A DNA stretch of 64,000 bases from Bugula neritina (Eukaryota > Animalia > Bryozoa). The notes beneath the pieces are model-generated. The model did no database searches. It worked only from the letters and a program-made list of their open reading frames with translations, and was not told where the DNA came from. Both the position numbers and the translations under genes were made by a program. The stretch covers positions 310,001-374,000 of the forward strand of contig OZ037765.1 of NCBI GenBank assembly GCA_964035545.1. The letters run 5' to 3'. Positions 2,952 to 58,657 of this stretch are shown in pieces (the first letter of the stretch is position 1; every line of letters starts with the position of its first letter).

Positions 2952-2992
2952 TCTAGTTACTGTATAAGAACAATGAGAAGTATTAGAACATC

Positions 2993-35560: not shown

Positions 35561-35967
35561 TGCTACACTTACAACATGAAACAGCTTATCTAGGTCACGG
35601 TGACAAGCGTGTCTGTACAGAGTCTTCACCAGAGTTCTCATGACTAGAGATCCATAGTGACCAAACAACATCGCAGGGCAGTCTGTTGGAATAAACAATA
35701 ACATCAGTATTTAATAACAATGAGATCATGTGACTAGAGAAGTCATGTGACTGGAGAGATCATGTGACTGGAGAGATCATGTGACTAAATGAATAAGACT
35801 CAGAATTTCGTCACTACAGGTAATTCTTACTTTCAAAGCAGGAGTAGAGAATGAGGAGGTCATCAACATCAAAGTTCCTCTGTCCAGTTGATGTCTCAGC
35901 TTCCTGTTGACTCACTCTGAGAGCAGAGAGTTCTTGTGGAGGAGACACTCTCTTTGTTGGACTTCAA

Positions 35968-36350: not shown

Positions 36351-37299
36351 ATACACTCTTATTACACAGGATAAGATAAAGGTATGAATTATATTTATCA
36401 GTATCAGCAATTTAATATAATATTCCAGAACTAAGTGAGAGCTACAAGAAATACACTCACCAACTCTACATGCTTGCATCACCACCACCTTAGGTTTACC
36501 AGCCATAGATGGAAAGTTAGCAGAGTTGAGTAACTTATATATATGTGACAGATAGACAGGGCTGCCATCTACTCCAGAGACAATGCCATTAGCTCCGTGT
36601 GCAAATATAAACAGGAAGAACACACCGTAACGGTTGTGGATCTCATCTTTTGTAACATCCACAATGCATTGCAGCATTTCCTGAAGATAAAATATCTCCA
36701 ATTTGATCAAAGAGAACATCGGTGTCGCAGTTAAAGATTAACTTAGAGAAGATCTAGATGTGAAAAAATAAAGGAAAAAGGTAGAAAAGGAGTGAATTCA
36801 TAGGAGGTACCTCAGCTGTGAGATTCTCCTTTTTGACAGGTTCCAGTCCCAACTTCCTACAGAGAATGAACGTATTCTTTAGATCAATGTGAGACCCTTT
36901 CCTCTCTCCTCCTTCATCATACATTCTGTTGTTTATAATCAGAGCTTTTCCTCTCACAGGACCCGACATCTTGTAGATCTACAGATAAGCATACATACAT
37001 GGTGGGTGCACATACAGGGTATTTGCAAGCATTGTATCATACTATAAATATGGTAACACACATAGTAGGCAGTGGCACTGTACATAAAGCAATGTCAATC
37101 AGAGTGATATGAACTATACAAACTTTTGATGTGTTTCTATAGCGAGATTTAATTCTTGTATTGGTAGTCGGAGTGACTGTTAAATGAGTGAGATCTCCCT
37201 CACAGGCGTCATTAAAGTCCTCTTCACTGGAGAGATCACTGAGTTCATCATCTGCTGGATGACCGGATGTAGCTCCAGGTACTCCTGTAGTACCTGTGA

Positions 37300-37523
37300 G
37301 TAACATATCTACAGATAGTAGTTTCTTACAGGTATTACCTACAGGTAGTAGTTTCTTACAGGTATTACCTACAGATAGTAGTTTCTTACAGGTATTACCT
37401 ACAGATAGTAGTTGCTTACATGTATTACCTACAGATAGTAGTTTCTTACAGGTATTACCTACAGGTAGTAGTTTCTTACAGGTATTACCTACAGATAGTA
37501 GCTGTTTACAGGTATTACCTACA
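37300..37523. repeat. 30-bp intronic minisatellite
   Basis: Unit ACAGATAGTAGTTTCTTACAGGTATTACCT, ~7 copies; counterpart at 51005-51220. Confidence 0.88.
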
Positions 37524-40500
37524 TTTTTTAATTGTTATCAACCAGTAGCTGATAGAGTATTAACGGCTTCTAACAAGGAAACACAAACACATGCAAACAT
37601 ACATACATACAGACAACTAAGGTGTACTATAGAGTGAAAGCACCCAACAAGTACCTGTTGGTGTATAGTAACTCTTCACAAACTGCTCCAACTCATTGAT
37701 ATTCTCAGCAGACAGCTGATAACCTGTGATGAGAAAGAGAACAAGTAACACACAATATTCACAATGTCAGCATGGTAATAGATAGACTGATTCTTCAGCA
37801 TTCAACTCACTAACACAACACTGCTGCCAAGAGGTACTTTAAAACCTGCAATTCTATATCTTAGTTGCCATATTTCAATATGTAACACAAATTAACACGT
37901 TTTATAGTTTTAAGTTTGCATAATCCAGACTCCAACCAGTTTAAGCTTCATATACTAATAAGTTAACCATGTATATAAAGACAAGCTACAATTTGATTGG
38001 TTTTCAATACTATTGTTTATACGTGGTCAGTATAGAGATATTAATCGGAAACATCAAATGACCAGCTAACTGCTAACACATTTATATAATATGGCTCAAA
38101 CAGGAAATAAGTTTCTACTAACAAGGATGTAAGAGACATGCTGGAACATTCTTGTACTTTCCGCACTCTTTAGATTTTGACTCAGCCACTGTGTGAAGAG
38201 GTTTATCTTTTTCGGGAGGTTGACACCAGCTTGGATTGATTTGTTGCTTTGGCCGCTTTTCTTCAACCAATGAGCAGTGAGTACAGGTATTGGTACATGT
38301 AATCTTACTTGCTCTCCATGTAGAGTTGACGTATTTCACTGTTGACTGAGTGGCAGAGGTCAACATTTTCCAAGCTCTACATATCTTCTGGCAGCTGGTT
38401 GCAACGGAAATGGTGAGTTTACGAGACTTGTAGTCGTGGAGCAGCTGTAGAATGCTATCATCGTCTGCCATCTCCACGCCGTTCTTTCTCACCATTTTTT
38501 CTGTACAGTTTTGGTAATCATTGAGAAGTTTCACTGAAATCTGGTGGTAGACATACTGGGGGAGGGGCAGCCCATCAAACGCCATGTCTACTGTTAGTTT
38601 CACAGGCTTTCTCTTGCAGGCAGTCAGGTTTGTAAGATAGTCCTGAGAGAAATATGGCATAGCATAGGTTGAGGTACCAGACGCATCATCCATCTTGAAT
38701 AGCAACTGAAAAGAGCTCAGTAATGTGACTGCCACGCCCATTTTTTCACTGCTGGTAAAGCTTGTTTCAGAAATCAAAAGATGTTGCAGCAGTTTCTCTC
38801 TCATCATCCCAGTTTGAAGAAACTCCTGGGCTAAGTCATTAAACTCAACGTCACAGTCAATCAGGAAGTCAACCAGAGTATCTTCTGTAATCTCTAACTG
38901 CCGCTTAGTCCACACTTCCTTCTCGTGAGTAAACAGCACATGAAGCAGTTCGGTTACCACAGATACGTCATAGAATATCAAAGTCTCCAGAATTTTCTTC
39001 TCTCGGTACCAAATGATATGACCACTGTTGTGTAGATAAGCCAGGATCGCTTTGAGTTGGTCTTCATCTGCTGATTTGTGTCGAGTGACCAGTTCAAGAA
39101 CTTCTCGAAATGTTTCGTAGCTTCCTTGGAGACTGCTGAGTGTCTGTGCGACATTCTTCCAGAGACTCGGCACTTTCTTCACAACTTGCTGACTCTCAGA
39201 GATGATCTGACTTCTCAAATCATCAAACACTGCCTCATACTCTGCTCCGACCACATAAACATCCTCCTTTCTAAACATCACATCATTCTTGAAATGACAA
39301 ATTTCTGCAAAACTTTTCCCTGGCCAGGCTGATGATTTTTCTTCCAGTCGTATCAGTTTAAGGACACTTTCAGTAGCTAAAAAGAAGTATGCCTTGAGCT
39401 CCTCAAATGCATCTTCACTGTAAGAATCTCGATGGGTAAAAACCAGTTTGGGAGCTCTAAGCTCCGGATTTGCCAGGTAGAGGTGTGACAGCCAATCAAA
39501 GTAGGCACAGCGGACAGCTTCATTTCCTCTCACCTTCAGATGCAACTCTTCAAATTTCTTCATACTTACAACAACAATGGGAATACAGTTTTGTTTGAGA
39601 GTGAACTGGTACGTAGATTGATATATTTCATTTCCGCCAAAGTCAATAAACTGAAGAGTGTTCTCCCCCACAGAGAGTTTCTCTATCCTAAACACCCTGG
39701 TGGTTTCATCTACTGCGGCATCAGCATCTCTATTGGTCAACTCTCTCACGCCATCCGATCTCAGAAGTGTTTTGATCAAACTAGTTTTCCCTGACATCGA
39801 ACAACCAATCACAGCGACAGTAGCTTCTGAGACGTCCAAGGAGCCACCAGACTGGATATCCTTGTAATACTGTTTGACAGCTTTAATTCCTTCTATACAA
39901 ACAGCATAAGGTGGGGATACGAGTGATTCACATCTCTCACAGCTCAGAGATGTGAGATTCTCCATATTCAGGAGTTCTGGGGTGTGTGATGTCATATGGC
40001 GGTTATTTGTCAGGTCAAGAGACTGGAGATTGGTCAACTGACTCAAGCTAAAAAGTAAACATATATATAACATAGTTCTAAACCAGGTTTTGATGATTTA
40101 ATCATACATATTTTAGTTATAGCGGAAAGTTGAGCTAGTTGAGCCATGGCGCTAGTAAATGGTTGAAATATATGGTTTAAACTTTCTCTTTTAAATCATT
40201 GCACCATTTTATCTCCTCTACTTAAGAGTGTTTTAGGTTAACTACCAGACATATGGAAGTATATGAAATCAAAACAAAAGCTTTCAGGTGCGCGAGTATT
40301 TGTCACAATTTTGCATAAAACATGAGAAAACTGCAGATGAGTTTTGATACAAAATAGAATTAATATTATTGCCAAGAGGATGTAAATCCAAAACGCAGGA
40401 CAATATTTATAATGTTGTAAAACAGCAACTATTGGTGCTAGTGAGGAAAGATTAAGAGTTGTGTTCTCTCAGTGTGTTCCTCTCGCCAGTAGATTATACT

Positions 40501-43426
40501 GTCATTGAATTGAAATACAAACCACTACTATTTCCATAATTAGCAGATATTTTCATTACAAGTTAATATAATATATTAGATAAATATATTCAAATGACTC
40601 ACCTGTCTGGTAATGTCTCTAAGTTATTCCAAGACACATCTAATGTGTGTAGCTGTGTGATTTGAGAGATGCTGTAATATATAATATAGTCAAGTATATG
40701 ATACAGTATATGTAGAATTATATTATAAACAGGATCTTTATATCTATATATTATAGCTATACAACTAGAGATAACTTGACCTAAATAATAGATACAAATG
40801 TAATATATTTATAACCTTGTTAACATTTTAGAATATATCCAAATCATTAGAGCAATTATATTAAATGACTGCTGCCATTATTACTGCTGCTGTTGCTATA
40901 AGTTACAGACTGCAGACTGAAGAATAATTTAGTTGAATATTTTATCATTATTTGAATATCAACTTATTTTATCTCCATTATATTATACATATACTCAGTT
41001 TATACTATTATATAATACAATTAAGTTAGATGAAAACATGACTATAACCACAGTTACCAGTACAGTTATGACTCTACAGTTACCACTGTTGCTGGGTAAT
41101 GCATTATGATATTATTAAAAATATCTATAGTGAAAGTTAATATAATAATAGTAGATATATAACTCACTCATCTGGTAATGTCTCTAATTTACAGTAACTC
41201 AGATACAACTTTCTAAGTGACTTCATCTTCAACAGTACGTCTGGTAATGTCTTCAAGTTATTCCCAGACACATATAATGTGTGTAGCTGTGTGAGTTGAG
41301 AGATGCTATAATATACAATATAGTCAAGTATATGATACAGTATGTAGGCCTATATACATGTTATATACAGTATCTTTATATCTACATATTACATAATTAT
41401 TATACCCAGGTAAACATAATGTAACTAAACCAACACTATTTACAAGTACATATAATATATTAGACAAATATGACTCACCTGTCTGGTAATGTCTCTAAGT
41501 TATTCCGAGACACATTTAATGTGTCTAGCTGTGTAAGTTGAGAGATGCTGTAATATACAATATAGTCAAGTATATGATACAGTATGTAGGCCTATATACA
41601 TGTTATATACAGGATCTTTATATAATATCTACATGTTACATAATTATTATACACAGGTAAACATAATATAACTAAACAAACACTATTTACAAGTTAATAT
41701 AGTATATTAGACAAATATGACTCACCTGTCTGGTAATGTCTCTAACTTATTCCCAGACACATCTAATGTGTGTAGCTGTGTGAGTTGAGAGATGCTGTAA
41801 TATACAATATAGTCAAGTATATGATGCAGTATATAGGCTATATATGTTATATACAGTACCTTTATATCTACATAATTATTATACACAGGTAAACATAATG
41901 TAACTAAACTAACAATGTATTTCCAACTAAATATAGTATATATTAGATAAATATGACTCACCTGTCTGGTAACGTCTTTAAGTTATTCCCATACACATAT
42001 AATGTGTGTAGCTGTGTGAGTTGAGAGATGCTGTAATATACAAACAATGAGATTAATGAGATATTACATACCAATGAGGTCATTGTCACACATGACATTA
42101 GGTTTAACAAAAAATATATTTAGTAGAAGAGTTAATATAATAATAGTAGATATATAACTCACTCATCTGGTAATGTTTCTAGTTTACAGAAACTCATATT
42201 CAACTCTCTAAGTGACTTCATCTTCAACAATACATCTGGTAATGTCTTTAAGTTATTCCCTAACACATTTAATGTGTGTAGCTGTGTGAGCTGAGAGATG
42301 CTGTAATATACAAACAATGAGATTAATGAGATATTATATACCAATGAGGTCATTGTCACACTTGACATTAGGTTGAGGTATATTTACTCAAGTCACTTTA
42401 GAGTTACACTATACTATATACTATAGAAAGTGCTACTATATCCATCTAGTAGAGCTATATACTAGCAGCAGGTAGAGAGTATACAGCTGAGGTGTAAAGC
42501 AATGTTATACAGTACTATTACCTGGGCTACAATTTTCAGAGTGTTGTAGAGTTGTCTTACCCACAGTGATGCTGTATGAAAAGATTAGCACATGTGAGAG
42601 GAGGAATATGATAGGCTGATGTGATGTGTGACTGACCAATCAGAGCTTACAGTGAACAGTCAACAAAGATCAACAGGGTGAAGGAAGGACATGTAAGGGA
42701 CTTAGGCTACAATCACTATCCGAACAGGGCAGAGTAGAGATAGGTGAGGATTAACAGGTCATATAGGGTAGGTGAAAATTAATGGGTAGGAAAACATGTC
42801 AACACCAGTTTGGAGTTGTCACACAACTGGAGTGGATATGGACTTACTAGTCTAAACTTCTTGGATCTTTTATTCCTTCGATACACAAGTTAGTTACAAG
42901 TGGAGCAAACTCCTTGATAGTAGAAGGTACATCTCCCTTTATCTTCAAGTGTGTGATCACATGACCTGCAGTTGAAGCCATAATCTCTTCCTTCGTGTAC
43001 AGCTGTGTCTCTTGGTTATACAACTCTCTCTTACTCTCAATTGGTTCCATACCAGAGTGTCTCCACCAACAGTCGTATTTTTCTGCAAAACTCAGTGTCA
43101 CATGTCACACATGTCACACGTGTCACATGTCACAGTATACATACAGCACATATATATCATGATACATCTGACATACAGTAACCTGGCAGGCTGCTACTCC
43201 ACATTGTAACTAATACTAAGTATAAATACCTGGAGGTGCACCTGCTGCCACCTGTCCATCCCCTGAACCACCTGCTGACTCGTCAGCCATCTTGTCTCCT
43301 TCCCCAAGTGCTACTCTGAAAGACAAGTTATACTCAGGTGTAGGTGTGGTGAGAGAGTGACCTATTTGTATACATGTATATTCACAGAGAACTGAGAGAG
43401 AGAGATAGAGGGCAATAGAACAAGCT

Positions 43427-43440
43427 GTTACCATAGCAAC
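43427..43440. promoter_or_regulatory. RFX X-box-like motif GTTACCATAGCAAC (also 56342-56355)
   Basis: Matches the GTNRCC-N(0-3)-RGYAAC consensus and is retained in both copies upstream of the first coding exon. Confidence 0.35.
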
Positions 43441-45586
43441 TGTGTAAACTATACCAACACCTGAGCACTTAATATCAGTTACTATGAGGTTAGCCTGTAA
43501 CTACATAACAAGATACTAGAAGGGTGGTTTTTTAGGAGCCCTTACTAAGCACACAATACTAACCACATTGAAAATTCAGTATGCATTGTATTCTGGGGAA
43601 GGCCGAAGGCCCATTGCTCAGTTAGTGCATTAGTCGAAAATTAGTAGAAACATGATATAGTTAAAGGCATCCTCACTGAGAATATTATAAATTTCACTCA
43701 CAATCTAGTTTAAGTTCTTGTTATATTATTGCTCTGTTATAGGTGGCATGCGTGTTGCCTACTTGTGATTGTTTAGCCTGAGACTACACTATGATTATTA
43801 GCAGCTGCCTCAATTAAGGGCTGCATCATCTATCAACATCCCATTATGGCTGCTTTATAAACTAAGTACACAGCAAGCTATTCTCTAGCCTGTCAACTAG
43901 CAAGCCTGTAATTAGTAATATATGCATTAGTATCTTCTCATCTCCAAGTGTTCACTGAAGCATGAAGTGTTGTGCAAGGGTGGTTTAATTAGTATTTTTA
44001 TTTCACAGTTCATATAAAAATGACAGCTATAGGCAATGAACTCAAAATATCCAGTTCAATGGCTATATAGTGACTGCAATTCTATTCTAGCTACAGCCAG
44101 TCAGCTTATATAGGCCCTTCATATGTTGACTATTAACTGAAAAACTAAAGTAAAAAATATTAAAGCCAAGCAAACATTTTGGGTCTACTGTACTGTATTT
44201 ATGATAAGCTTGGTGAAAGTTTACCTCATAGTTTATAAAAAATAGTTTGCATTTGAAGTTGGCGTCAAAAAATTATTGGTATTGAATAAAATAGTAAATT
44301 TCTGGCTTGGCAGTTAATTATTTGATATCACATATTTAATCTCTAAAATTATCTGTAAGCTGCTAAACTGCATTAGTCTATGATATTATTCTTAATATCA
44401 GTAAATACAAGCATTGAAGACAAAGAATAATAAACATCTTGGACGCTACTCTAAAATTAAATAACCAAAGCTGCACAACTTACACCAAACCAAACAACTC
44501 CACAAGATATGTAGATCAGGGCAACATTATTAGTATATAAGAGCTCATGCAGACCCACCAAATAAAACCTCACCTATAAACTAAAATTTAAAAACCATGT
44601 TGTAGATCTTCCTGTTGCTCAGAGCAACTTTTTGAAATGTTCAATAAATAATTTTAATTCTAATAATAATTCTACTAATTTTCAGACCAATGCACCTTCG
44701 GAATATTGCTCCGTCCCCCTGCAATAAACTGCTACCAACTTTCTTACTGTCCCCACACTCTATTCTATCAAATTTCAAAGTTAACTGACTCCTTGATAAA
44801 CAAACAGTATGTCACAACAGTTACATAGCACTTTGAAAATCACAACACAATTACTTTGACAGCATAATTGTATCGCTACAACATTCCACAATATAAGGCT
44901 ACTAGAAGGTATAAATTATGGGATAATATAAACATAGCTTTAGTAAACAGATACAAACATTACAGAGACTTACCTGTTACCTGAATAAATATTTCTCTTC
45001 TGGTAAAATATATTCACCACCAAGATGAAGGAAAGAGAAGTATTTCAGTACTAGGTAGTAGTAGAGTTACACAGTCAAGTCAGGTCTCTTGAGAGATGCC
45101 ACCTTTACTATGCATTACTTATTTAAATAATGGTTAATAGACAGCCACTAAACTACAACTATAACTTACATACTATAAGGAAGTTTCAGTTCGTTGTAGA
45201 CAACATATTAATCAGGAACTCACACTGCGTGACGGAATGTTAGCAGATGGAATGTTGGCACAAAGGGTTAAAGGTCATATATTACTCAGTCTAGGCGAAG
45301 CCTTTGAAAATCAATCTATCAGCAGCTGCAGGCACCTCTTCTGATTGGTAAAGTCAATGAAGTGGAACTGAAAATATTCCTAGTTCAGTGGGTAGAGTTG
45401 TGCTTCCCTAAAAACATAGCTTAAGTGTTTGATAAATTGTCAAGTGCTTTTAAATGCTGGCATAATTTTTGCATCATTCCAATGACGAGTTGATTAAGGA
45501 CACATCAGCTATACCAGAGACCTGTGTGAAGGACCTGAGCTAAATTTAGAGTGAATCAACTCTCATTCTATGTAGATGTCTTGCAG

Positions 45587-46236
45587 GAAAAAGATGGGAA
45601 AACTGTGACTAGAAAAGAGAAGACAACTCATATTTCTATACACACAGTTCACCTTGATGGACTGAGAGAGGTGTATAGGCATTTCCTAGTAGCAGAAAAT
45701 GGGGCCATAGTGGAGGTACAGAAATATATATTTATATATAAATTATATATTGTCTTATGTGATCATGACCATTGGATATTATGTATATTATATATTAATA
45801 GAGTAGATATAATGTATATATTATATATTGATAGAGTATTTGTAATGCAGGTATTTGGTGAACAAGCTGTAACACAGTTGGAAGGGCGTACCAAAACACC
45901 CTTACCTAAGCAATCCAACTTTGGTTCCCAGCTAAGCATTCATAAGGTATATACTGAAATACTTACTTACTGAAGGTATTGTCAACAAAGTTCCAACATA
46001 CTAGAGGAATTGTCTGCTCTATTCAACAGGAATATTCACACTCAGTAGTACCAGACATCACACTTATGTGAATGAGTCATTCCCAGTCATTACTTGTACT
46101 ATTGTAGGTCAAAGGTCGACGTACTGTGCTTACTAGAGCAGGATTTAGAGAGGACACAACTCTAACAAGTGACACACTGGAGAGCAGACAATCCCCAGAT
46201 AGTAAAGAAGACACATTACAACAGACTAATAATTAG
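45587..46236 (+). pseudogene. Duplicated last three exons of the OFCC1-like gene (orphan fragment or alternative 3' end)
   Basis: EKDGKTVTRKEKTTHISIHTVHLDG.., VFGEQAVTQLEG.. and VKGRRTVLTRAG..QTNN*, with intact splice sites and frames; no upstream exons were duplicated. Confidence 0.8.
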
Positions 46237-47096
46237 ACAACTTTCCTATTTTTATATTCATAATAATTATTATACAATACATGTATTTTATATTCATATA
46301 ATTATTATATAATACATGTATTTTATAATCATAATAAATATTATATAATACATGTATTTTTATTATGAAATTTAGATACAATAAAATATTTACTAATTTT
46401 CTTATAATATTATTTAAACTTGTGTTTTTACCTGTTTAAATCTCACACCTGCATGTCATAATATTTTTACAATAAAACTCGTATGATATTTATCAGATGT
46501 TTAATATCTATTTCTATTACTACTTTATTCTGAATACCAGAGATATAATATTTCTATATAAAACTTATGACTAAGAATTCTATAAATAGAGGCAAACCCT
46601 TTCACCTGATATGTAATTTTACTAAAATAGACATATCATTGCCCTGTGCACTGCTTCTGCCGTATATTTTTTATTCGATGAGTCTTACTTCCTGTTTAAC
46701 AGGAAGTTGCTGATATGATTGAAAGTATATTTTCAATCTGCACCTCATAGTCATCAGAATAAAGATTAATAATTTATTACCTAATAATAGTAATATTAGG
46801 AAAATGAAGGTAGAAGTGTAGCTGGCCACATTAGTACAATAACTATAATATACATTTAACAGGTTAACAATAATATAATACCAACAGCTGATGTGATGGG
46901 TGCCAGTAGAAATAGCACAGGTAGAGATGACCCAAATGGAGAAGTATGTAAAATGGTGCATTTTCATTATGGGGGCTTTGGGTGGAGGGTTTGAGGCAAA
47001 TTTAACATCAGTGTGACATTTTTAAATACTTTTCCATTTATGCCATTTGTATCTAAAATTGATGTGATGAATAGAAGCTAATAGTGGCCACAAAGA

Positions 47097-47725
47097 AGAG
47101 GCTGTATAAGGAGAGGCTATATAAGGAGAAGCTGTGTAAGGAGAGGCTGTGTAAGGAGAGGCTGTGTAAGGAGAGGCTGTGTAAGGAGAGGTTGTGTAAG
47201 GAGAGGCTGTGTGAGGAGAGGCTGTATGAGGAGAGGCTGTGTAAAGAGAGGCTGTGTAAGGAGAGGCTGTGTAAGGAGAGGCTGTGTAAGGAGAGGCTGT
47301 GTATGGAGAGGCTGTGTAAAGAGAGGCTGTATAAGGAGAGACTGTATAAGGAGAGGCTGTATAAGGAGAGGCTGTGTAAGGAGAGGCTGTGTAAGGAGAG
47401 GCTGTGTAAAGAGAGGCTGTGTAAGGAGAGGCTGGGTAAGGAGAGGCTGTATAAGGGGAGGCTGTGTAAGGGGAGGCTGTGTAAGGGGAGGCTGTGTAAG
47501 GAGAGGCCGTGTAAGGGGAGGCTGTGTAAGGGGAGGCTGTGTAAGGAGAGGCCGTGTAAGGAGAGGCCGTATAAGGAGAGGCTGTGTAAGGAGAGGCTGT
47601 GTAAGGAGAGGCTGTGTAAGGAGAGGCTGTGTAAGGAGAGACTGTGTAAGGAGAGGCTGTGTAAGGGGAGGCTGTGTAAGGAGAGGCCGTGTAAGGAGAG
47701 GCTATACAAGGAGAGGCTGTGTAAG
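47097..47725. repeat. 15-bp minisatellite (AGGCTGTGTAAGGAG)n, copy B
   Basis: About 42 units. Confidence 0.93.
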
Positions 47726-48533
47726 CTGTTTATCTCAATGAGAGGGGAAACACAGAAAGAATATCTCCCAGAAAGAGAGTGACTAGTCTTTCTAAGGTTG
47801 GCTGGAGATAATGCTAACTGAACAGCTAATGGGACGTGCTCACACCCCACCCCTGTATCAGTTATGTATATTTAGTTCTGGTGGCAATGCTATGGAACTT
47901 TCTCAGTTGACTTGCAGAGTTTAATGAGCTAGTAGAAAGTAATATATTATATGTACCCTTTCTTTAACTGCAGTGTATTATATATAAATTGCATAGGGGA
48001 ATAAAATTACAGTTCATATTAAACTTTTTATTTATTTACCTCTTTATAAATAAATTTTTTGCCAATTGTTTTACATGTAATATATTATAATATTTTTACA
48101 CTATATTCTATGCATATATATTTTATGTAGTTTGAACCAAACTGTTGCAATAACAAAGCAGACAAGATGATTATAACATATTGATATAAAATATTGTAAT
48201 CACAGAATTATATAATGTTATAATATTACTATATAGTATCAAAATAATTATAGAATAAGATATATAGGTTCATCAGATAATATATATGATAACAGTATAC
48301 TGTATATAGTATATAGTTCATCAGATAGTATATATGATAACAGTATACTGTATATAGTATAACCAGTATAGTTCATCAGATAATATGTATGATAACAGTA
48401 TACTGTATATAGTATAACCAGTATAGTTCATCAGATAATATATATGATAACAGTAAACTGTATATAGTATAACCAGTATAGTTCATCAGATAATATATAT
48501 GATAACAGTATACTGTATATAGGATATAGTTCA

Positions 48534-51500
48534 TCAGATTCCGTGAAACTCAGGAAACAGATACAACTTCCTGTCCCTCGTCAGAGTATTCACGACTATT
48601 GGAGTCTGCGTCACGTAAAGCTCTGGCCTTCTCGCTCTGAGTTTCCCCGTTATTCTCCTCACTCTGCCCTTCACCTTCAAACAGTTCATACGTATTATAT
48701 ACTGTAGATATGTAGTATATACTGTAGATATATACTATATACTGTAGATATATACTATATACTGTAGATATATATTACATACTGTATGTATATATTATAT
48801 ACTGTAGATATATATTATATACTGTAGATATATATTATATACTGTAGATATATACTATATACTGTAGATATGTATTATATACTGTAGATATATATTACAT
48901 ACTGTAGATATATATTATATACTGTAGATATATATTATATACTGTAGATATGTATTATATACTGTAGATATATATTATATACTGTAGATATATACTATAT
49001 ACTGTAGATATATATATTATATACTACACTTACAACATGAAACAGGTCATCTAGGTCACGGTGACAAGCGTGTCTGTACAGAGTCTTCACCAGAGTTCTT
49101 ATGACTAGAGATCCGTGGTGACCAAACAATATCGCACGGCAGTCTGTTAGAATAAACAATAACATCAGTATTTACTATTTAATAACAATGAGATCATGTG
49201 ACTAGAGAGGTCATGTGACTCAAGGGATCATGTGACTTGACATATCATGTGACTAAAGAGGTCATGTGGCTAGAGAGGTTGTGTGATTGAAAAAATCATG
49301 TGACTAGAGAGGTCATGTGACTAGAGAAGTCATGTGACTCAAGGGGTCGTGTGACTGAAGAGATCATGTGACTAATTAAATAAGACTCGGATTTCTGTCA
49401 CTACAGGTAATTCTTACTTTCAAAGCAGGAGTAGAGAATGAGGAGGTCATCAACATCAAAGTTCCTCTGTCCAGTTGATGTCTCAGCTTCCTGTTGACTC
49501 TCTCTGAGAGCAGAGAGTTCTTGTGGAGGAGACGACTTTCTTTGTTGGACTTCAATAACTGGTTGACCTAGATATACAGCAGATAATTATATATAACTGG
49601 TTGACCTAGATATACAGTAGATCATTATATATAACTGGTTGACCTATATATACAGTAGATGATTGTATATAACTGGTTGACCTAGATATACAGTAGATAA
49701 TTATATATAACTGGTTGACCTAGATATACAGTAGATCATTATATATAACTGGTTGACCTAGATATACAGTAGATCATTATATATAACTGGTTGACCTAGA
49801 TATACAGTAGATTATTATATATAACTGGTTGACCTAGATATACAGTAGATTATTACATATAACTGGTGGACCTAGATATGCAGTAGATTATTATATATAA
49901 CTGGTTGACCTAGATATGCAGTAGATAATTATATATAACTGGTTGACCTAGATGTACAGTAGATAGTTATGTATAATTAGTTGACCTAGATATACAGTAG
50001 ATAATTATATATAACTGATTGACCTAGATATACAGTAGATAATTATATATAACTGGTTGACCTAGATATACAGTAGATGATCAGCAATGTGATGGAATAT
50101 ACCAGAACTAAGTGAGAGCTATAAGATATACACTAACCAACTCTACACGCTTGCATCACCACCACCTTAGGTTTACCAGCCATAGATGGAAAGTTAGCAG
50201 AGTTAAGTAACTCATAGATCTTTGACAGGCTGACAGGGCTGCTATCCACTCCAATGACAGTGCCATTAGCTCCATGTGCAAATATAAACAGGAAGAACAC
50301 ACCGTAACGGTTGTGGATCTCATCTTTTGTAACATCCACAATGCATTGCAGCATTTCCTGAAGATAAAATATCTCCAATTTGATCAAAGAGAACATCGGT
50401 GTCGCAGTTAAAGATTAACTTAGAGAAGATCTAGATGTGAAAAAATAAAGGAAAAAGGTAGAAAAGGAGTGAATTCATAGAAGGTACCTCAGCTGTGAGA
50501 TTCTCCTTTCTAACAGGTTCCAGTCCCAACTTCCTACAGAGAATGAACGTATTCTTTAGATCAATGTGAGACCCTTTCCTCTCTCCTCCTTCATCATATA
50601 TTCTGTTGTTTATAATCAGAGCTTTTCCTCTCACAGGACCTGACATATTGTAGATCTACAGATAAACAGATAAACATACATACGTATCTTCTTAAACACA
50701 CTGTGGCAGCACATGCAGGGTATTTATAAGTAACACATCCTACTATAAACACGTTAACACACATAGTATGCAGTGGAGCTGTACATAAAGCAATGTCAAT
50801 CAGAGTGATATGAACTATACAAACCTTTGATGTGTTTCTATAGAGAGATTTAATTCTTGTGTTGGTAGTCGGAGTGACTGTTAAACCAGTGAGATCTCCC
50901 TCACATGTGTCATTAAAGTCCTCTTCACTGGAGAGATCACTGAGTTCATCATCTGCTGGATGACTGGAAGTAGTTCCAAATACTCCTGTGGCACCTGTGG
51001 GTAACATATCTACAGATAGTAGTTACTTACAGGTATTACCTACAGGTAGTAGTTTCTTACAAGTATTACCTACAGATAGTAGTTACTTACAGGTATTACC
51101 TACAGTTAGTAGTTACTTACAGGTATTACCTACAGATAGTAGTTACTTACAGGTATTACCTACAGATAGTAGCTTCTTACAGGTATTTCCTACAGATAGT
51201 AGTTACTTACAGGTATTATGTACATTCTTTAATCGTTATCAACCAGTAGCCTGATAGAACATTAACAGCTTTTAGCTGTGCAAGGAAACACCTACACACA
51301 ACTAACGTATACTATAGACTGAAAGCACCTAACAAGTACCTGTTGGTGTATAGTTACTCTTCACAAACTGCTCCAACTCATTGATATTCTCAGCAGACAG
51401 CTGGTAACCTGTGATGAGAAAGAGAACAAGTAACATACAATATTCACAATGTTAGCATAGTAATAGATACACTGATTCTTCAGCATTCAACTCACAAACA

Positions 51501-54500
51501 CAACGCTGCTGCCAAGAGGTACTTTACAAGCTACAATGCTATATCATAGTTGCCATATTTAAGCCAGTAACACAAATTAACACGTTTTATAGTTTTTACT
51601 TTGTATAATCCAGACTCCAACCAATTTAAGCTTCATATATTAATAAGTCAACCATCTATATAAAGACAAGCTATAATTTTATTGGTTTTCAATGCTATTG
51701 TTTATATGTTGTCAGTATAGAGATAATAACCTGAAACATCATATGACTAGCTAACTGCTAACACAATTATATAATATGGCTGACACAGGAAATAAGTTTC
51801 TACTAACAAGGATGTAAGAGACACGCTGGAACATTCTTGTACTTTCCACATTCACCAGATGATGACTCAGCCACTGTGTGAAGAGGTTCATCTTTCTCTG
51901 GTTGTTGACACCAGCTCGGATTAATATGTCGCTTTGGCCGCTTTTCTTCAACCAATGAGCAGTGAGCACAGATATTGGTACAAGTAATCTTACTTGCTCT
52001 CCACGTAGAGTTGACGTATTTCACTGTTGACTGAGTAGCAGAGGTCAACATTTTCCAAGCTCCACATATCCTCTGACAGCTGGTTGCAACGGAAATGGTG
52101 AGTTTACGAGACTTGTAGTCGTGGAGCAGCTGCAGATTGCTATCACCATTTGTTACCGCCACACCGTTTTTTCTGACCACTTTTTCTGTGCAGTATTGGT
52201 AACCATTGAGAAGACTCACTGAAATCTGGTGGTAGACATACTGGGGGAGGGGCAGCCCACCAAACGCCATGTCTACTGTTAGTTTCACAGGCTTTCTCTT
52301 GCAGGCAGTCAGGTTTGTGAGGTAGTCCTGAGAGAAATATGGCATAGCATAGGTTGGGGTACCAGACGCATCCTCCGTCTTGATTAGCAACTGAAAGGAG
52401 CTCAGCAATGTGACTGCCACATCCATTTTTTCTCTGCTGGTAAAGCTTGTCTCAGAAATTAGAAGATGTTGCAGAAGTTTCTCTCTCATCATCCCAGTTT
52501 GAAGAAATTCCTGAGCTAATTCATTGAACTCAACGTCACAATCAATCAGGAAGTCAACCAGAGTATCTTCTGTAATCCTTAACTGCCGATTAGTCCACAC
52601 TTCCTTCTCGTGAGTGAACAGCACATGAAGCAGTTCGGTAACCACAGATATATCATAGAATATCAAAGTCTCCAGACTTTCTTTCTCTCGGTACCAAATA
52701 ATATGACTACTGTTGTGTAGATAAGCCAGGATCACTTTGAGTTGGTCTTCATCTGCTAATTTGTGTCGAGTGACCAGTTCAAGAACTTCTGGAAATGTTT
52801 TGTAGCTTCCGTGAAGACTGTTGAGTGTCTGTGCAACATCCTTCCAGAGACTTGGCACTTCCTTCACAACTTGCTGACTCTCAGAGATGATCCGACTTCT
52901 CAACTCATCAAACACTGCCTCATACTCTGCTCCGACCACGTAAACATCCTCTCTTTCAAACATCACATGATTTTGGAAATGACGAATTTCTGCAAAACTT
53001 TTTCCTGGCCAAGGAAAACACCCTGCTGCTGATTTTTCTTCCAGTCGAATCAGTTTAAGGACACTTTCAGTAGCTAAAAGAAAATACTCTCTGAGCTCCT
53101 CAAATGCTTCTTCACTGTAAGCATCTCGATGGGTAAAAACCAGTTTGGGAGCTCTAAGCTCCGGATTTGCCAGGTAGAGGTGTGACAGCCAATCAAAGTA
53201 GGCACAGCGAACGGCCTCATTACCCTTCACCTCCAGATACAACTCTTCAAATTCTTTCATGTTTACAACAACAATGGGAATACAGTTTTGTTTGAGAGTG
53301 AACTGGTACGTAGATTGATATATTTCATTCCCACCAAAGTCAATAAACTGAAGAGTGTTCTCCCCCACAGAGAGTTTCTCTACTCTAAACACCCTCGTGG
53401 TTTCATCTACTGCGGCATCAGCCTTTCTATTGGTCAACTCTCTCACACCATCCGATCTCAGAAGTGTTTTGATCAAACTTGTCTTCCCTGACATCGAACA
53501 ACCAATCACTGCGACAGTAGCTTCTGAGACTTCCAGGGAGCCACCAGACTGGATATCTTTGTAATACTGTTTGACAGCTCCAATTCCTTCTATACAAACA
53601 GCATAAGGCGGGGATACAAGTGATTCACATTCCCTGCAGTCCAGAGATGTGAGATTCTCCATATTCAGGAGTTCAGGGGTGAGTGATGTCATACGGCGGT
53701 TCTTCATCAGGTCAAGAGACTGGAGATTGGTCAGCTGACTCAAGCTAAAAAGTAAACATAGTTCTAAACCAGAATAGTTTTGGTGATTTAATTGTATATA
53801 TTTTAGTTATAGGGAAAGTAGGGCTAGTTGAGCCATGGCGCTAGTAAATAGTTGAAACACATTGTCTAAATTATCTCCTTTACATCATTGAACCATTTCA
53901 TCTCTTTTACTTAAGAGTGTTTTAGGTTAACTACCAGACATATGGAAGTATATGAAACCAAAGCCAAGGTTTTCAGGTGCGCGAGTATTTTCACATTTTT
54001 TGCATAATATATTATATACAGTATACGTAGGCCTATATTTTATCTTACACAGCATCCTGCTATCTGCTGTATATACTATAGTTACACAGGTGAAGATAAC
54101 TTGACCTAAATAATGTAATATATTTTATATAACCGTGCTAACATTTTAAAATATCCTAATCATTGGAGAGCAATTATATTAAATGACTGCTACTATTATT
54201 ACTGCTGCTGTTGCTAAGAGTTACAAGCTGCAGACTGAAGAATAATTTAGTTTAATATTTTATCATTATTTGAGTATCAACTTATCTTATATTCATTATA
54301 TTATACATACTCAGTGTATACTATTATGATGTACCACCTTTACTCCTGCTACAAATTATATTATGACTAATGAGCAAATATCTATAGTGAGAGTTAATAT
54401 AATAATAGTAGATATATGACTCACTCATCTGGTAATGTCTCTAAGTAACAGCTACTCAGATTCAACTTTCTAAGTGACTTCATCTTCAACAGTACATCTG

Positions 54501-56118
54501 GTAATGTCTCTAAGTTATTCCCAGACACATATAATGTGTGTAGCTGTGTGAGTTGAGAGATGCTGTAATATATAATATAGTCAAGTATATGATACAGTAT
54601 CCATAGGCCTATATACATGTTATATACAGTATCTTTATATCTACATATTACAAGATTATTATACACAGGTAAACATAATGTAACTAAACTAACACTATTT
54701 ACAAGTTAATATAGTATATTAGACAAATATGACTCACCCGTCTGGTAATGTCTCTAAGTAATTCCAAGACACATCTAATGTGTGTAGCTGTGTGAGTTGA
54801 GAGAAACTGTAATATATAACATAGTCAAGTATATGATACAGTATATATAGGCTGTATACATGTTATATACATTATCTTCATATCTACATATTACATAATT
54901 ATTATACACATGTAAACATAATGTAACTAAACTAACACTATTTACAAGTTAATATAGTATATTAGATAAATATGACTCACCTGTCTGGTAATGTCTTTAA
55001 ATTATTCATAAACACATTTAATGTGTGTAGCAGTGTGAGTTGAGAGATACTATAATATACAATATAGTCAAGTATATGATACAGTGTGTAGGCCTATATG
55101 TTATATACAGTATCTTTATATCTACATATTACATAATTATTATACACAGGTAAACATAATGTAACTAAACTAACACTATTTACAAGTTAATATAGTATAT
55201 TAGACAAATATGACTCACCTGTCTGGTAATGTCTCCAACTTATTCTGAGACACAACTAATGTGTGTAGCTGTGTGAGCTGAGAGATGCTGTAATATACAA
55301 ACAATGAGATTAATGAGATATTACATACCAATGAGGTCATTGTCACACTTGACATTAGGTTGAGGTATATTTACTCTAGTCACTTTAGAGTTACACTATA
55401 CTATATGCTATAGAAAGTGCTACTATATCCATCTAGTAGAGCTATATACTAGCCGCAGGTAGGGAGTACACAGCTGAGGTGTAAAGCAATGTTATACAGT
55501 ACTATTACCTGGGCTACAATTTTCAGAGTGTATTAGAGTTGTCTGACCCACAGTGAGACAGTATGAAATAAGTAGCACATGTGAGAGGAGGAATATGATA
55601 GGCTGATATTTGGAGTTGTCACGCAACTATATAGAGTGGATATAGACTTACTAGTCTAAACTTCTTGGATCATTTATTCCTCTGATATACAAGTTAATTA
55701 CAAGTGGAGCAAACTCCTCGATAGTAGAAGGTACATCTCCATCTATCTTCAAGTGAGTGATCACATGACCTGCAGTTGAAGCCATGATTTCCTCCTTCGT
55801 GTAGAGCTGTGTTTGTCGGAATAACAACTCTATCTCATCGTCAATTGGTTCCATACCAGAGTGTCTCCACCAACAGTTGTATTTCTCTACAAAACATAAT
55901 ATATCTCTTAGAACTCAGTGTCACACATGTCACACATGTCACACATGTCACACATGTCACAGTATACATACAGTACATATATACCATGATACATCTGTAC
56001 ATATAGTAACCTGGCAGGCTGCTACTCCACATTGTAACTAATACTAAGTATAAATACCTGGAGGTGCACCTGCTGCCACCTGTCCCTCCCCTGAACCATC
56101 TACTGGCTCGTCAGCCAT
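48534..56118 (-). CDS. LRR-Roc-COR-caspase fusion protein, copy B (MFHAS1-like Roco with a C-terminal peptidase C14 domain), ~1201 aa, intact
   Basis: Exons (-): 56118-56058, 55886-55652; LRR cassettes 55287-55219, 55049-54981, 54806-54738, 54562-54425; Roc-COR 53744-51808; 51408-51340, 50994-50825; caspase 50655-50488, 50357-50138, 49567-49418, 49143-49034, 48674-48534. All are GT-AG and phase-consistent, totalling 3606 nt with one open frame. P-loop GCSMSGKTS, G3 DFGG, G4 THRD; caspase YNM..RGKALIINN, RKGS, AHG, GKPKVVVMQACRV, DLLILYS, QTP...TL..KLYLFP. Confidence 0.88.
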
Positions 56119-57025: not shown

Positions 57026-57885
57026 TGCATTATATTTGAGGTTAGCTAATCTACGTTAGCAAAAACCCGCCACGGTGGTGAAAGGTGACCAAAGGTGACC
57101 AATCTACGTTAGTTAGTCACTAAATGCTTCAAATTGATTCTAGTTCAAGTTACACTCAAAGTTTTCTCCTCTTGAAAAACACATTCCTTCTTTGAAAAAA
57201 GATTTCAAGTTAACCAGTCACTGCCTCACCATATCAACAAACATGGCCGCCATTTGTGCAGTTTGCGTTACTTTTCCTGCTATTTTCCCTCCACTTTTTC
57301 TGCCTTTGCTTTCGCTATATTTTAAATTTACACTTAATAATGTTTGAAAATAAATAAAATAAATACAGATTCAATAATTTTACTTAGAAGAAAGGGTGAT
57401 TGATCACCAGAGAAATATTTGGTTACAAGAGAAGCCAATATTCTGCATATAGCCACTGACTTGAGGCTAACAATTACTTTAGTTACTATCAGATGAAACA
57501 ATTATAGTATAGTCTCAGAATCTGCTTTTAGTACACCAACACCAGCACTCTCTGACTCGAGCACATGACGTCACTGCAATAGAGAGTCGTACAAGAAGGG
57601 TTGTAAAGATTACTAGGATTGTTAGATTCTCACCATCTCCTGTCCTGCACTGCCTGTGTAGTAAACTAACTCTCTGAATAGTCAGTGAATGCATAATAAT
57701 TCCTTCTACTAGTTCTCTAAGAGTTTGTGACTGAAACCTACTGGTACATATGCATAACATAGTTTATTCATTGGCTGTTTGTGCTGTAGAGTTGTGTTCT
57801 CTCATAGGAGTGAGATATTCCTAGCTAGTGCTCATCATGAACACTAGTTAGGAGTTATCTTCTTGATAAGTACTAGGATGTAATG

Positions 57886-58657
57886 CTGTGACTATACTGT
57901 GACTATACTGTGACTATACTATGACTGTACTGTGACGGTACTGTGACTATACTGTGACTATACTGTGACTGTACTGTGACTATACTGTGACTGTACTGTG
58001 ACTACACTGTGACTGTACTGTGACTGTACTGTGACTATACTGTGACTATACTGTGACTATACTGTGACTGTACTGTGACTGTACTGTGACTATACTGTGA
58101 CTATACTGTGACTGTACTGTGACTATACTGTGACTGTACTGTGACTGTACTGTGACTATACTGTGACTATACTGTGACTATACTGTGACTATACTGTGAC
58201 TGTACTGTGACTATACTGTGACTATACTGTGACTATACTCTGATTATACTGTGACTGTACTGTGACTGTACTGTCACTGTACTGTGACTATACTGTGACT
58301 GTACTGTGACTATACTGTGACTATACTGTGACTGTACTGTGACTATACTGTGACTATACTGTGACTATACTGTGACTGTACTGTGACTGTACTGTGACTA
58401 TACTGTGACTGTACTGTGACTATACTCTGATTATACTGTGACTGTACTGTGACTGTACTGTAACTGTACTGTGACTATACTGTGACTGTACTGTGACTAT
58501 ACTGTGACTATACTGTGACTGTACTGTGACTATACTGTGACTATACTGTGACTATACTGTGACTGTACTGTGACTGTACTGTGACTATACTGTGACTGTA
58601 CTGTGACTATACTGTGACTGTACTGTGACTGTACTGTGACTATACTGTGACTATACT
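57886..58657. repeat. 11-bp minisatellite (CTGTGACTRTA)n
   Basis: About 70 units with two interspersed variants (ATA/GTA). Confidence 0.95.

What the first reader, a model, noticed from the sequence alone, without database searches (positions are those of the whole stretch)
40603..55287. Modular, hypervariable LRR cassette exons that differ in number and order between copies
Seen: every LRR cassette exon is 69 nt (one 23-aa repeat) or 138 nt (two repeats) with phase-2 introns on both sides, so any exon can be skipped, duplicated or swapped in frame. Copy A has 6 cassettes with 8 repeats (2-1-1-1-2-1; 40603-42300). Copy B has 4 cassettes with 5 repeats (1-1-1-2; 54425-55287). The framework ISQLTQLHTL-x-V-x-x-N-x-L(K/E)TLPD is nearly invariant, while the x positions vary widely. 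A: NVLGNN, YVYGNN, DVSGNK, NVSRNN, YVSGNN, DVSWNN. B: VVSQNK, NVFMNN, DVSWNY, YVSGNN. Flanking introns are also homologous, forming ~240-bp exon+intron units. Known: these positions form the concave ligand-binding face, diversified in lamprey VLRs and plant NLRs, and exon-per-LRR shuffling was reported for brown-algal (Ectocarpus) ROCO genes. Inference: a diversifying recognition repertoire generated by unequal crossover, gene conversion and/or alternative splicing in an animal Roco.
Basis: partly seen in the sequence, partly recalled or inferred. Interest (0 to 1): 0.86.

Follow-up and report, generated by a model that had tools for sequence, protein, structure and literature searches.

The report
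Swappable LRR exons, bryozoan Roco-caspase genes
Two neighbouring bryozoan genes for an LRR-GTPase-caspase protein build their sensor arm from frame-neutral cassette exons. The predicted ligand-contacting residues evolve far faster than neutral DNA, which is the signature of a germline-diversified receptor family. Whether cells also mix the exons by splicing could not be tested.

Summary
On the minus strand lie ten AG|exon|GT cassettes of exactly 69 or 138 nt, all phase 2-2. Copy A is 2-1-1-1-2-1 (42300 to 40603) and copy B is 1-1-1-2 (55287 to 54425). They sit in about 245-bp exon+intron tandem units.

The two genes are tandem paralogues about 90% identical, in a cheilostome bryozoan. Each encodes LRR, Roc, COR and a caspase. 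They belong to a family with at least 139 Roc-COR loci and at least 713 candidate cassettes in this genome.

The ancestral unit, found family-wide and in Watersipora, is a two-LRR exon of 138-153 nt. The 69-nt single-LRR cassette is a derived form seen in this gene pair and in one metagenome contig.

In 39 cassettes of the nine closest paralogues, five codons take 7-19 non-synonymous changes per site. These codons are x5 and x8 of repeat a, and x5, x7 and x8 of repeat b. Synonymous sites take 1.3 and introns 3.2-3.7. Framework omega is about 0.2. In the window, exposed codons have pN 0.24 against intron pi 0.06.

Diversifying selection on a germline repertoire is therefore well supported. Unequal recombination is inferred. 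A real change of cassette order between A and B is not shown.

The scan had already noted sister arrays elsewhere in this genome.

The parts
42163..42300 (-). Copy A cassette 1, 138 nt, two LRRs (a+b), phase 2-2; no counterpart in B
   Evidence: The upstream intron is 98% identical to that of B1. The downstream intron is of the '138' type.
41962..42030 (-). Copy A cassette 2, 69 nt, one a-type LRR (YVYGNN)
41726..41794 (-). Copy A cassette 3, 69 nt (DVSGNK)
41479..41547 (-). Copy A cassette 4, 69 nt (NVSRNN)
41168..41305 (-). Copy A cassette 5, 138 nt, two LRRs
   Evidence: It is 94% identical to B cassette 4.
40603..40671 (-). Copy A cassette 6, 69 nt (DVSWNN), flanked by longer and more diverged introns; no counterpart in B
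55219..55287 (-). Copy B cassette 1, 69 nt (VVSQNK)
54981..55049 (-). Copy B cassette 2, 69 nt (NVFMNN)
54738..54806 (-). Copy B cassette 3, 69 nt (DVSWNY)
54425..54562 (-). Copy B cassette 4, 138 nt, two LRRs
43230..43290 (-). Copy A predicted first coding exon (MADESAGG...), phase-1 donor
   Evidence: It is conserved in B. The model is predicted, with no RNA evidence.
42848..43082 (-). Copy A exon 2 (N-terminal cap of the LRR arm); its donor TA|GTAAGT is phase 2, so it can join any cassette
38123..40047 (-). Copy A large exon (1925 nt): last LRRs, Roc GTPase and COR; phase-2 acceptor
   Evidence: Pfam Roc 31.2 bits (cut-off 27) and COR-A E 1e-7. Coordinates. Motifs GCSMSGKT, DFGG and THRD were read in the translation.
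36461..36978 (-). Copy A caspase p20 exons (about 36811-36978 and 36461-36680) with FAHGANG and QACRVG motifs
   Evidence: Pfam Peptidase_C14 E 3e-12 and 6e-5. Sequence.
56058..56118 (-). Copy B predicted first coding exon
55652..55886 (-). Copy B exon 2, phase-2 donor
51808..53744 (-). Copy B large LRR-Roc-COR exon (1937 nt)
   Evidence: It is 89% amino-acid identical to A.
50136..50655 (-). Copy B caspase p20 exons
   Evidence: Pfam Peptidase_C14 E 1e-13. Sequence.
42521..42570 (-). 50-nt cassette-like remnant between exon 2 and cassette A1. It is not frame-compatible, and its acceptor AG is lost in B. Probably a dead exon.

Best explanation
The stretch holds the sensor arms of two tandem paralogous genes of a bryozoan-specific, greatly expanded LRR-Roc-COR-caspase family.

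Shown:
- Each LRR array is encoded by symmetric phase-2 cassette exons. Ancestrally each cassette holds two LRRs of alternating a/b type.
- In this pair there are also single a-type LRR cassettes of 69 nt.
- The cassettes lie in tandem exon+intron units.
- The framework residues, and even their synonymous sites, are conserved. The x5, x7 and x8 positions of the LxxLxLxxN strand change faster than introns.

Inferred:
- Unequal recombination between the near-identical units adds or removes whole LRRs without breaking the frame.
- The 69-nt cassettes arose from 138-nt ones by an in-frame 69-nt deletion between the two repeated ACATTACC(A/T)GA (..TLP..) motifs. This fits because their 3' end (CCAGACAG|GTGAGT) matches the 3' end of the C7 paralogues' 138-nt exons.
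- Positive selection for new binding surfaces diversifies the concave face among paralogues. The result is a germline-encoded repertoire of cytosolic sensors.
- Ligand binding to the LRR arm would release the Roc-COR switch and activate the fused caspase by proximity. This would resemble an NLR or apoptosome built on a Roco GTPase.
For: - Structure: all 10 window cassettes and 39 cassettes of nine paralogues are intact, AG/GT-bounded and phase 2-2. The exon 2 donor and the big-exon acceptor are phase 2. Tandem units have period 243-247.
- Selection, C7 cassettes by Nei-Gojobori: hypervariable codons have dN 0.81 against framework dS 0.078, and framework omega is 0.19.
- Selection, C7 cassettes by counts on a tree: codons 11, 14, 34, 36 and 37 take 7.2-18.7 non-synonymous changes per site (Poisson p 1e-8 to 1e-34). 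Synonymous sites take 1.28 and introns 3.2-3.7.
- Selection, a priori partition of exposed positions: pN 0.287 against pS 0.073 in C7. In the window pN is 0.244, other codons have pN 0.043, and intron pi is 0.057-0.064.
- Window exons are more diverged (83-97% identity) than the flanking introns (93-98%).
- Family: at least 139 Roc-COR exons (67 scored, all E<1e-130), 114 caspase exon hits, many 1.5-4 kb downstream of Roc-COR exons, and 713 candidate cassettes, of which 148 of 150 scored pass and none has a stop.
- Ten other loci carry 138-144-nt two-LRR phase-2 cassettes.
- Watersipora gene models of 1413 and 1419 aa carry LRR, COR and caspase by Pfam and match the query's Roc-COR exon over about 600 residues. 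One locus shows 141-153-nt LRR exons plus one large Roc-COR exon.
- The Roc P-loop, DxxG and THxD motifs and the caspase His and Cys motifs are present.
Against: - There is no RNA evidence, so the exon models are predictions.
- No ligand or function is known, and the immune role rests on analogy.
- The hypervariable codons were first seen in the same data, although the a priori LRR partition gives the same answer.
- Parsimony counts on a tree ignore recombination among cassettes.
- Intron alignments of AT-rich DNA may inflate or deflate the neutral rate.
- The window alone has few repeats: variable-site counts for exon versus intron give Fisher p 0.13-0.56.
- The Bugula neritina homologue contig shows no cassette within 8 kb upstream of its big exon.
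- The AlphaFold model of one cassette is of low confidence (pLDDT 63).
Confidence: 0.8

Rival explanations
1. Combinatorial alternative splicing. Besides germline diversity, the frame-neutral cassettes are skipped or chosen in different combinations, so that each gene yields many LRR arms. This is reported for brown-algal ROCOs and, in another form, for Dscam.
For: - All junctions from exon 2 to the big exon are phase 2, so every skipping product stays in frame.
- Splice sites are near-identical between cassettes.
- Synonymous sites and the last 20 nt or so of the upstream introns are more conserved than distal intron, which could reflect splicing control.
- Splice variants of LRR exons are reported in Ectocarpus ROCOs (PMC11378527).
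Against:
- The acceptors (TATATTACAG) and donors (GTGAGT) are strong and uniform, as expected of constitutive exons.
- Watersipora models include consecutive LRR exons.
- No docking or selector elements were looked for or seen.
Confidence: 0.25
2. Somatic diversification. Cassettes are copied or rearranged in somatic cells, as in lamprey VLR assembly or chicken Ig gene conversion.
For: The only support is the general resemblance of many near-identical LRR modules with hypervariable concave residues.
Against: - Every cassette lies in order, in one orientation, inside a complete gene, with canonical splice sites.
- There are no flanking donor cassettes lacking splice sites and no pseudo-cassettes.
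- The diversity is fully accounted for by differences between germline paralogues.
Confidence: 0.02
3. Relaxed constraint or decaying duplicates. The variable positions are merely unconstrained, and the copies are drifting, with no selection for diversity.
For: The window alone gives no significant excess of variable sites in exons over introns. The genes are young tandem duplicates.
Against: - Non-synonymous change at five codons is 2-5 times the intron rate and 6-15 times the synonymous rate. Neutrality cannot exceed the neutral rate.
- All 49 cassettes examined, and 148 further genome-wide hits, are free of stops.
- Framework omega is 0.19.
- The large exons and the caspase motifs are intact.
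Confidence: 0.04
4. Same molecular device, different biology. The family mediates allorecognition (colony fusion or rejection) or another self/non-self decision, rather than pathogen sensing.
For: - Bryozoans are colonial animals with allo-incompatibility, and cell-death modules are used for this in other colonial organisms (PMC8195603).
- Hypervariable recognition surfaces fused to a death protease would suit either role.
Against: - The predicted protein starts without a hydrophobic signal sequence and no membrane-spanning segment was noticed, although none was formally searched for. It therefore looks cytosolic, whereas contact allorecognition usually needs surface molecules.
- Diversity here lies between paralogues. 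Allelic polymorphism was not examined.
Confidence: 0.12

Closest known systems
Brown-algal (Ectocarpus, Saccharina) LRR-ROCO genes with shuffling LRR exons (Zambounis et al. 2012, PMC3341825; Teng et al. 2024, PMC11378527)
   Same: - LRR-Roc-COR order.
- LRRs in separate symmetric phase-2 exons.
- Variable exon number among tandemly duplicated paralogues.
- Positive selection at concave-face positions.
- Proposed role as an immune receptor.
   Different: - The algal exons are 72 nt with one LRR each. Here the ancestral unit is 138-153 nt with two LRRs, and 69-nt single-LRR exons are a local derivative.
- Algal introns hold inactivated and reversed LRR exons. None was found here, apart from one 50-nt remnant.
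- Algal ROCOs have no caspase.
- The two lineages are separated by about a billion years (PMC11378527), and the closest hits by sequence are all bryozoan. The exon design is therefore most likely convergent, though common descent was not tested.
Animal MFHAS1 (MASL1), the LRR-Roc-COR Roco without a kinase. NCBI names the Watersipora relatives 'MFHAS1 homolog'.
   Same: N-terminal LRRs followed by Roc and COR, with no kinase domain.
   Different: - There are at least 139 loci here, not one. That MFHAS1 is a single-copy vertebrate gene is from my own knowledge.
- A caspase is fused at the C-terminus.
- The LRR arm is made of cassette exons with hypervariable positions.
- Orthology to MFHAS1 was not tested.
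NLR / plant R-gene type STAND receptors, and bacterial LRR-AP-GTPase-COR-effector conflict proteins (Kaur et al. 2021, PMC8195603)
   Same: - Three-part logic: a fast-evolving LRR sensor, an NTPase switch and a death effector.
- Large lineage-specific tandem expansions.
- Diversifying selection on LRR solvent-exposed residues.
   Different: - The switch is a Ras-like Roc GTPase with COR, not a STAND ATPase.
- The effector caspase is on the same chain instead of being recruited through death-fold adaptors.
Lamprey/hagfish VLRs and arthropod Dscam
   Same: Modular repeats or exons that could in principle be combined. In VLRs, the hypervariable residues are on the concave face of the LRRs.
   Different: - VLR diversity is made somatically from cassettes that lack splice sites.
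- Dscam uses mutually exclusive exon clusters.
- Here all the diversity seen is between germline paralogues, and every cassette is an ordinary exon.

Membership tests
ROCO (Roc-COR) proteins | Roc (Ras of complex) GTPase domain | tested here: met
   Pfam PF08477 scores 31.2 bits (A) and 31.3 bits (B) against a cut-off of 27. The motifs GCSMSGKT, DFGG and THRD are read in the translation.
ROCO (Roc-COR) proteins | COR domain directly after Roc on the same chain | tested here: met
   PF16095 COR-A has E 1.2e-7 at residues 310-471, after Roc at 94-186. The score of 32.1 bits is just below the gathering cut-off of 35.3. Relatives carry the same precomputed domain.
Shuffling LRR-ROCO genes of brown algae | Each LRR in its own 72-nt exon | tested here: not met
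   Exons are 69 nt (one LRR) or 138 nt (two LRRs) here. They are 138-144 nt (two LRRs) in the rest of the family.
Shuffling LRR-ROCO genes of brown algae | Symmetric phase-2 introns that allow in-frame gain or loss | tested here: met
Shuffling LRR-ROCO genes of brown algae | Positive selection at concave-face LRR positions | tested here: met
Shuffling LRR-ROCO genes of brown algae | Inactivated or reversed LRR exons in introns | tested here: not met
   BLAST of cassettes against the window and 100 kb of paralogous loci found only intact, same-strand cassettes. One 50-nt remnant lies at 42521-42570.
Shuffling LRR-ROCO genes of brown algae | Alternative splicing of LRR exons | not testable with these tools
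No reads were laid.
Caspases (Peptidase C14) | p20 domain with catalytic His (..HG..) and Cys (QACxG) | tested here: met
   PF00656 hits have E 3e-12 and 1e-13, above the cut-off. FAHGANG and QACRVG are present in A and B.
VLR-like somatic LRR assembly | Incomplete germline gene flanked by donor cassettes without splice sites | tested here: not met
   The gene is complete, and the cassettes are ordered exons with AG/GT.
MFHAS1 orthologues | One-to-one orthology with vertebrate MFHAS1 and no C-terminal effector domain | tested here: not met
   There are at least 139 paralogues and a C-terminal caspase. No phylogeny against MFHAS1 was made.

The most novel reading that the evidence does not exclude
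The frame-neutral cassettes are not only an evolutionary construction kit but are also used during the animal's life. Regulated exon skipping, or exchange between the near-identical units in somatic lineages of the colony, would give different zooids or cells different LRR arms on a self-contained sensor-switch-caspase protein. That would be an individualised recognition system, for pathogens or for allorecognition, built on a Roco GTPase in a lophotrochozoan.
Probability: 0.1. Interest if true: 0.9.

Novelty: new variant of a known kind. Interest (0 to 1): 0.62.

Why it matters
Large, fast-evolving intracellular receptor families are known in animals mainly as NLRs. Exon-per-LRR shuffling in ROCO genes is known only from brown algae.

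Here an animal phylum with almost no described immunogenetics shows more than a hundred LRR-Roc-COR-caspase genes. Their sensor arms are built from interchangeable exons, with clear-cut diversifying selection at the predicted binding face.

The design puts sensor, switch and death protease on one chain. That would give a compact, experimentally tractable model of receptor-triggered caspase activation, and a striking case of probable convergence with brown algae.

In the paper library searched here I found nothing on bryozoan ROCO or MFHAS1-like expansions. The proteins are in public databases only as 'MFHAS1 homolog' or 'uncharacterized protein'.

Tried and rejected
Exons were searched one by one, by reference. 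No structure of the whole LRR arm could therefore be predicted.
- The Bugula neritina homologue contig (L011) has no cassette within 8.2 kb upstream of the large exon. This is uninformative: the contig may be too short, or that gene may differ.
- A 45-aa cassette search in the 5.8-billion-protein set aimed to find spliced transcript fragments. It gave only one genomic ORF from a metagenome.
- Evidence for recent A-B gene conversion: intron identities among units are star-like (90-98% over 130 nt). Collinear A-B identity in the array (90.8%) equals that of the rest of the gene, so conversion is neither shown nor excluded.
- Exon versus intron variable-site counts within the window alone are not significant.
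- The AlphaFold2 model of one cassette with 42 aligned cassettes has low confidence (pLDDT 63). I used it only for the strand positions.
- A diversity-generating-retroelement-like, base-specific mutation pattern was considered. Both the first and second codon positions vary with no single-base bias, so I did not pursue it.
Full report
**What is in the sequence**

I read 40400-42600 and 54200-55500 and scanned the minus strand for AG|69 or 138 nt|GT without stops and with an LRR motif. The scan returned exactly ten exons.
- Copy A, in the direction of transcription: 42163-42300 (138 nt), 41962-42030, 41726-41794, 41479-41547 (69 nt each), 41168-41305 (138 nt), 40603-40671 (69 nt).
- Copy B: 55219-55287, 54981-55049, 54738-54806 (69 nt each), 54425-54562 (138 nt).

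Each exon starts with the third base of a split codon and ends with two bases of the next, so the introns are phase 2 on both sides.

Tandem Repeats Finder reports exon+intron units of period 247 (A) and 243 (B), 3.3 copies, at 89-90% matches. A low-stringency BLAST with cassette queries found no further copies, broken or reversed.

**The genes**

A self-comparison of the window shows a tandem segmental duplication, about 30.5-43.4 kb against about 45.5-56.2 kb, at roughly 90% identity. Both copies lie on the minus strand.

The largest open stretch of each copy hits Pfam Roc and COR-A (659 aa in A, 667 aa in B). Downstream exons hit Peptidase_C14.

I delimited the 5' part by splice-site logic and A/B conservation.
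- A: exon 1 at 43230-43290 (MADES..., phase-1 donor), exon 2 at 42848-43082 (donor TA|GTAAGT, phase 2), and the large exon at 38123-40047 (acceptor TTTTTAG|C, phase 2).
- B: 56058-56118, 55652-55886 and 51808-53744.

Every junction from exon 2 to the large exon is therefore phase 2, and any cassette could be lost, gained or skipped in frame.

A 50-nt cassette-like remnant at 42521-42570 is not frame-compatible and has lost its acceptor in B.

The Roc motifs (GCSMSGKT, DFGG, THRD) and the caspase motifs (FAHGANG, QACRVG) are present. No hydrophobic signal sequence is seen at the predicted N-terminus. These models are predictions, and no RNA evidence could be obtained.

**Whose genome, and how big is the family**

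The large exon finds a Bugula neritina protein at 65% identity (Roc, COR, caspase). It finds Watersipora subatra 'MFHAS1 homolog' proteins at about 37%. Bacterial Rocos appear only at E about 1e-11. The organism is therefore a cheilostome bryozoan.

In its own 216-Mb assembly the exon has 139 first-look candidates. All 67 that were scored have E<1e-130. Two are in the window, nine are on contig C7 (65-66% identity), and there are big clusters on C1 at 32.5-35.5 Mb and on C3-C8.

A caspase p20 exon has 114 hits. Many lie 1.5-4 kb downstream of Roc-COR exons.

A profile of the two-LRR cassette has 713 first-look candidates. Of 150 scored, 148 pass, and none contains a stop.

Across 1.84 billion representative proteins, only 83 clusters reach E<=1e-30. 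The full-length ones looked up are Watersipora models. Two of these, of 1413 and 1419 aa, carry LRR, COR and caspase by Pfam and match the query's Roc-COR exon over about 600 residues.

Mapping one of them on its locus shows LRR exons of 141-153 nt and a single 2055-nt Roc-COR exon. The exon design is therefore shared among bryozoans.

**The cassette is ancestrally a two-LRR exon**

Ten-kilobase stretches upstream of the nine C7 paralogues hold 39 cassettes. All are 138 nt, phase 2-2 and intact, with 2-6 per stretch. Ten loci from more distant subfamilies carry 138-144-nt two-LRR phase-2 cassettes.

The 138-nt unit alternates an a-type repeat (LxxLxLxxNxL) and a b-type repeat (LxxLxLxxCxL). 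The 69-nt cassettes of the window are all a-type.

Their 3' end, CCAGACAG|GTGAGT, matches the 3' end of the C7 138-nt exons, not the internal a/b junction. I infer that they arose from 138-nt exons by an in-frame 69-nt deletion between the two repeated ACATTACC(A/T)GA motifs. This is inference from the sequences, not a demonstrated event.

A 1151-bp metagenome contig holds 69-69-138 cassettes collinear with the 3' part of the array at 87-88% identity. The single-LRR cassette is therefore not an assembly oddity of this genome.

**Hypervariability: the 39 C7 cassettes**

- Nucleotide diversity at first and second positions of codons 11, 14, 34, 36 and 37 is 0.24-0.74. These codons carry 6-13 different residues.
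- Almost every other site, including third positions, is at 0-0.05.
- By Nei-Gojobori, the hypervariable codons have dN 0.81. Framework dS is 0.078 and framework omega is 0.19. Aligned intron diversity is 0.22-0.28.
- On a FastTree of exon plus 120-nt flanks, parsimony counts give 3.2-3.7 changes per intron site and 1.28 per synonymous site.
- The same counts give 7.2, 18.7, 9.2, 17.5 and 16.0 non-synonymous changes per site at the five codons (Poisson p 1e-8 to 1e-34). All other codons are unremarkable.
- To avoid circularity, I also used the a priori exposed positions of the LRR strand (x2, x3, x5, x7, x8). They give pN 0.287 against pS 0.073, while the other codons give pN 0.020.

**Hypervariability: the window's ten a-type repeats**

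- The variable codons are 11, 13, 14, 16 and 18.
- The a priori exposed codons have pN 0.244, against 0.043 elsewhere and an intron pi of 0.057-0.064.
- Exons are 83-97% identical, while the introns beside them are 93-98% identical.
- Counts of variable sites in the window alone are not significant.

**Where the variable residues sit**

A low-confidence AlphaFold2 model of one cassette (pLDDT 63) puts strands at residues 9-13 and 32-36. The variable residues would then lie in and just after the two strands. From general knowledge of LRR structure, this is the solvent-exposed concave side.

**History of the units**

In the tree of C7 units, the nearest neighbour lies in another gene for 37 of 39 cassettes. 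Cassettes therefore fall into positional classes inherited through whole-gene duplication. Hypervariable residues differ within the classes, so diversification continued after gene duplication.

Some classes sit at different ranks in different genes, and some are duplicated within a gene. This fits unit gain, loss and local rearrangement. I cannot be sure that every cassette in a 10-kb stretch belongs to one gene.

In the window, A2-A5 and B1-B4 are collinear (1-1-1-2; 90.8% over 997 bp), and A has one more cassette at each end. Intron types are mosaic: A1 has the 'first-cassette' upstream intron and the '138-type' downstream intron, and the short A1-A2 intron joins parts of both. That is what breakpoints in or near the conserved exons would give.

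Unit-to-unit intron identities are star-like, and A-B identity in the array equals that of the rest of the gene. Recent conversion between A and B is therefore neither shown nor excluded.

**Interpretation**

The best-supported reading is a germline repertoire of cytosolic sensors. It would be built by gene and unit duplication, kept in frame by symmetric introns, and diversified at the binding face by positive selection.

The step from LRR binding through the Roc-COR switch to caspase activation is inferred from domain order. It is also an analogy to NLRs and to bacterial LRR-AP-GTPase-COR-effector proteins (PMC8195603).

Relaxed constraint is excluded by rates above neutral and by the intactness of all cassettes. 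Somatic assembly has no support. Alternative splicing remains open. The low synonymous and acceptor-proximal intron diversity would fit splicing constraints, or exon-centred homogenisation. Allorecognition is a possible biological role.

**Comparison with what is known**

Brown-algal ROCOs have one LRR per 72-nt phase-2 exon, shuffling, positive selection and splice variants (PMC3341825, PMC11378527). The bryozoan genes share the logic but differ in several ways:
- unit size;
- the near-absence of dead intronic exons;
- the fused caspase;
- lineage, so the likeness is probably convergent.

Searches of the paper library for bryozoan ROCO or MFHAS1 expansions found nothing.

Earlier notes of this scan describe 15- and 10-cassette arrays in sister genes on C1 at about 33-35 Mb, with the same conclusion. 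I reached my reading before seeing them, and the family-wide tests here agree with them.

**Limits**

Noticed in passing
window 2987-7810 (+): An uninterrupted 1608-aa open frame with aspartyl protease, reverse transcriptase, RNase H and integrase domains, typical of a Ty3/gypsy-type LTR retrotransposon. It sits in a GC-rich island (58-59% GC against about 35% around it). I only observed it. No repair or consensus was attempted.
   Followed up: partly
window 12913-13345, 20487-21232, 23398-23984, 25393-26015, 27518-29250, 32131-32584, 33145-34108, 34270-35561, 47092-47725, 49555-50078, 57883-58657: There are many long minisatellite arrays with periods of about 11-55 bp. Several lie inside the introns of both Roco-caspase copies and differ in length between A and B.
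   Followed up: no
C7 cassettes (L001-L010) and window cassettes: Synonymous sites of the cassette framework (1.28 changes per site) and the last 20 nt or so of the upstream introns are far more conserved than distal intron (3.2-3.7 changes per site). This could be a splicing constraint or exon-centred homogenisation. It remains unexplained.
   Followed up: partly
L022 (Logan SRR4020083 contig, 2688 bp): This is a third genomic version of the large Roc-COR exon, 91-92% identical in DNA to both A and B. It is absent from this assembly. It comes either from a sister species or from a copy-number variant.
   Followed up: partly
L024 (JGI metagenome 3300003318 contig, 1151 bp): It holds cassettes of 69, 69 and 138 nt, collinear with the 3' part of the array at 87-88% identity. 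The residues differ at the exposed positions (YILDVSNNCF and YILDVSDNCF against HTLxVSxNNL).
   Followed up: partly
G000 genome-wide: Most Roc-COR exons sampled have a caspase p20 exon 1.5-4 kb downstream. The genome seems to hold on the order of a hundred LRR-Roc-COR-caspase genes. Earlier scan notes also mention an ankyrin-caspase gene just beyond the window's end.
   Followed up: partly
L011 (Bugula neritina VXIV02000289.1): The annotated 907-aa homologue (EB796_002463) is a fragmentary model. No LRR cassette lies within 8.2 kb upstream of its Roc-COR exon.
   Followed up: partly
window 37040-37534 (-) and 50964-51251: A 30-nt repeat inside the linker intron or exon region gives a weak Pfam 'Decapeptide repeat' hit (35 bits, below the cut-off). 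It is probably a minisatellite artefact rather than protein.
   Followed up: no
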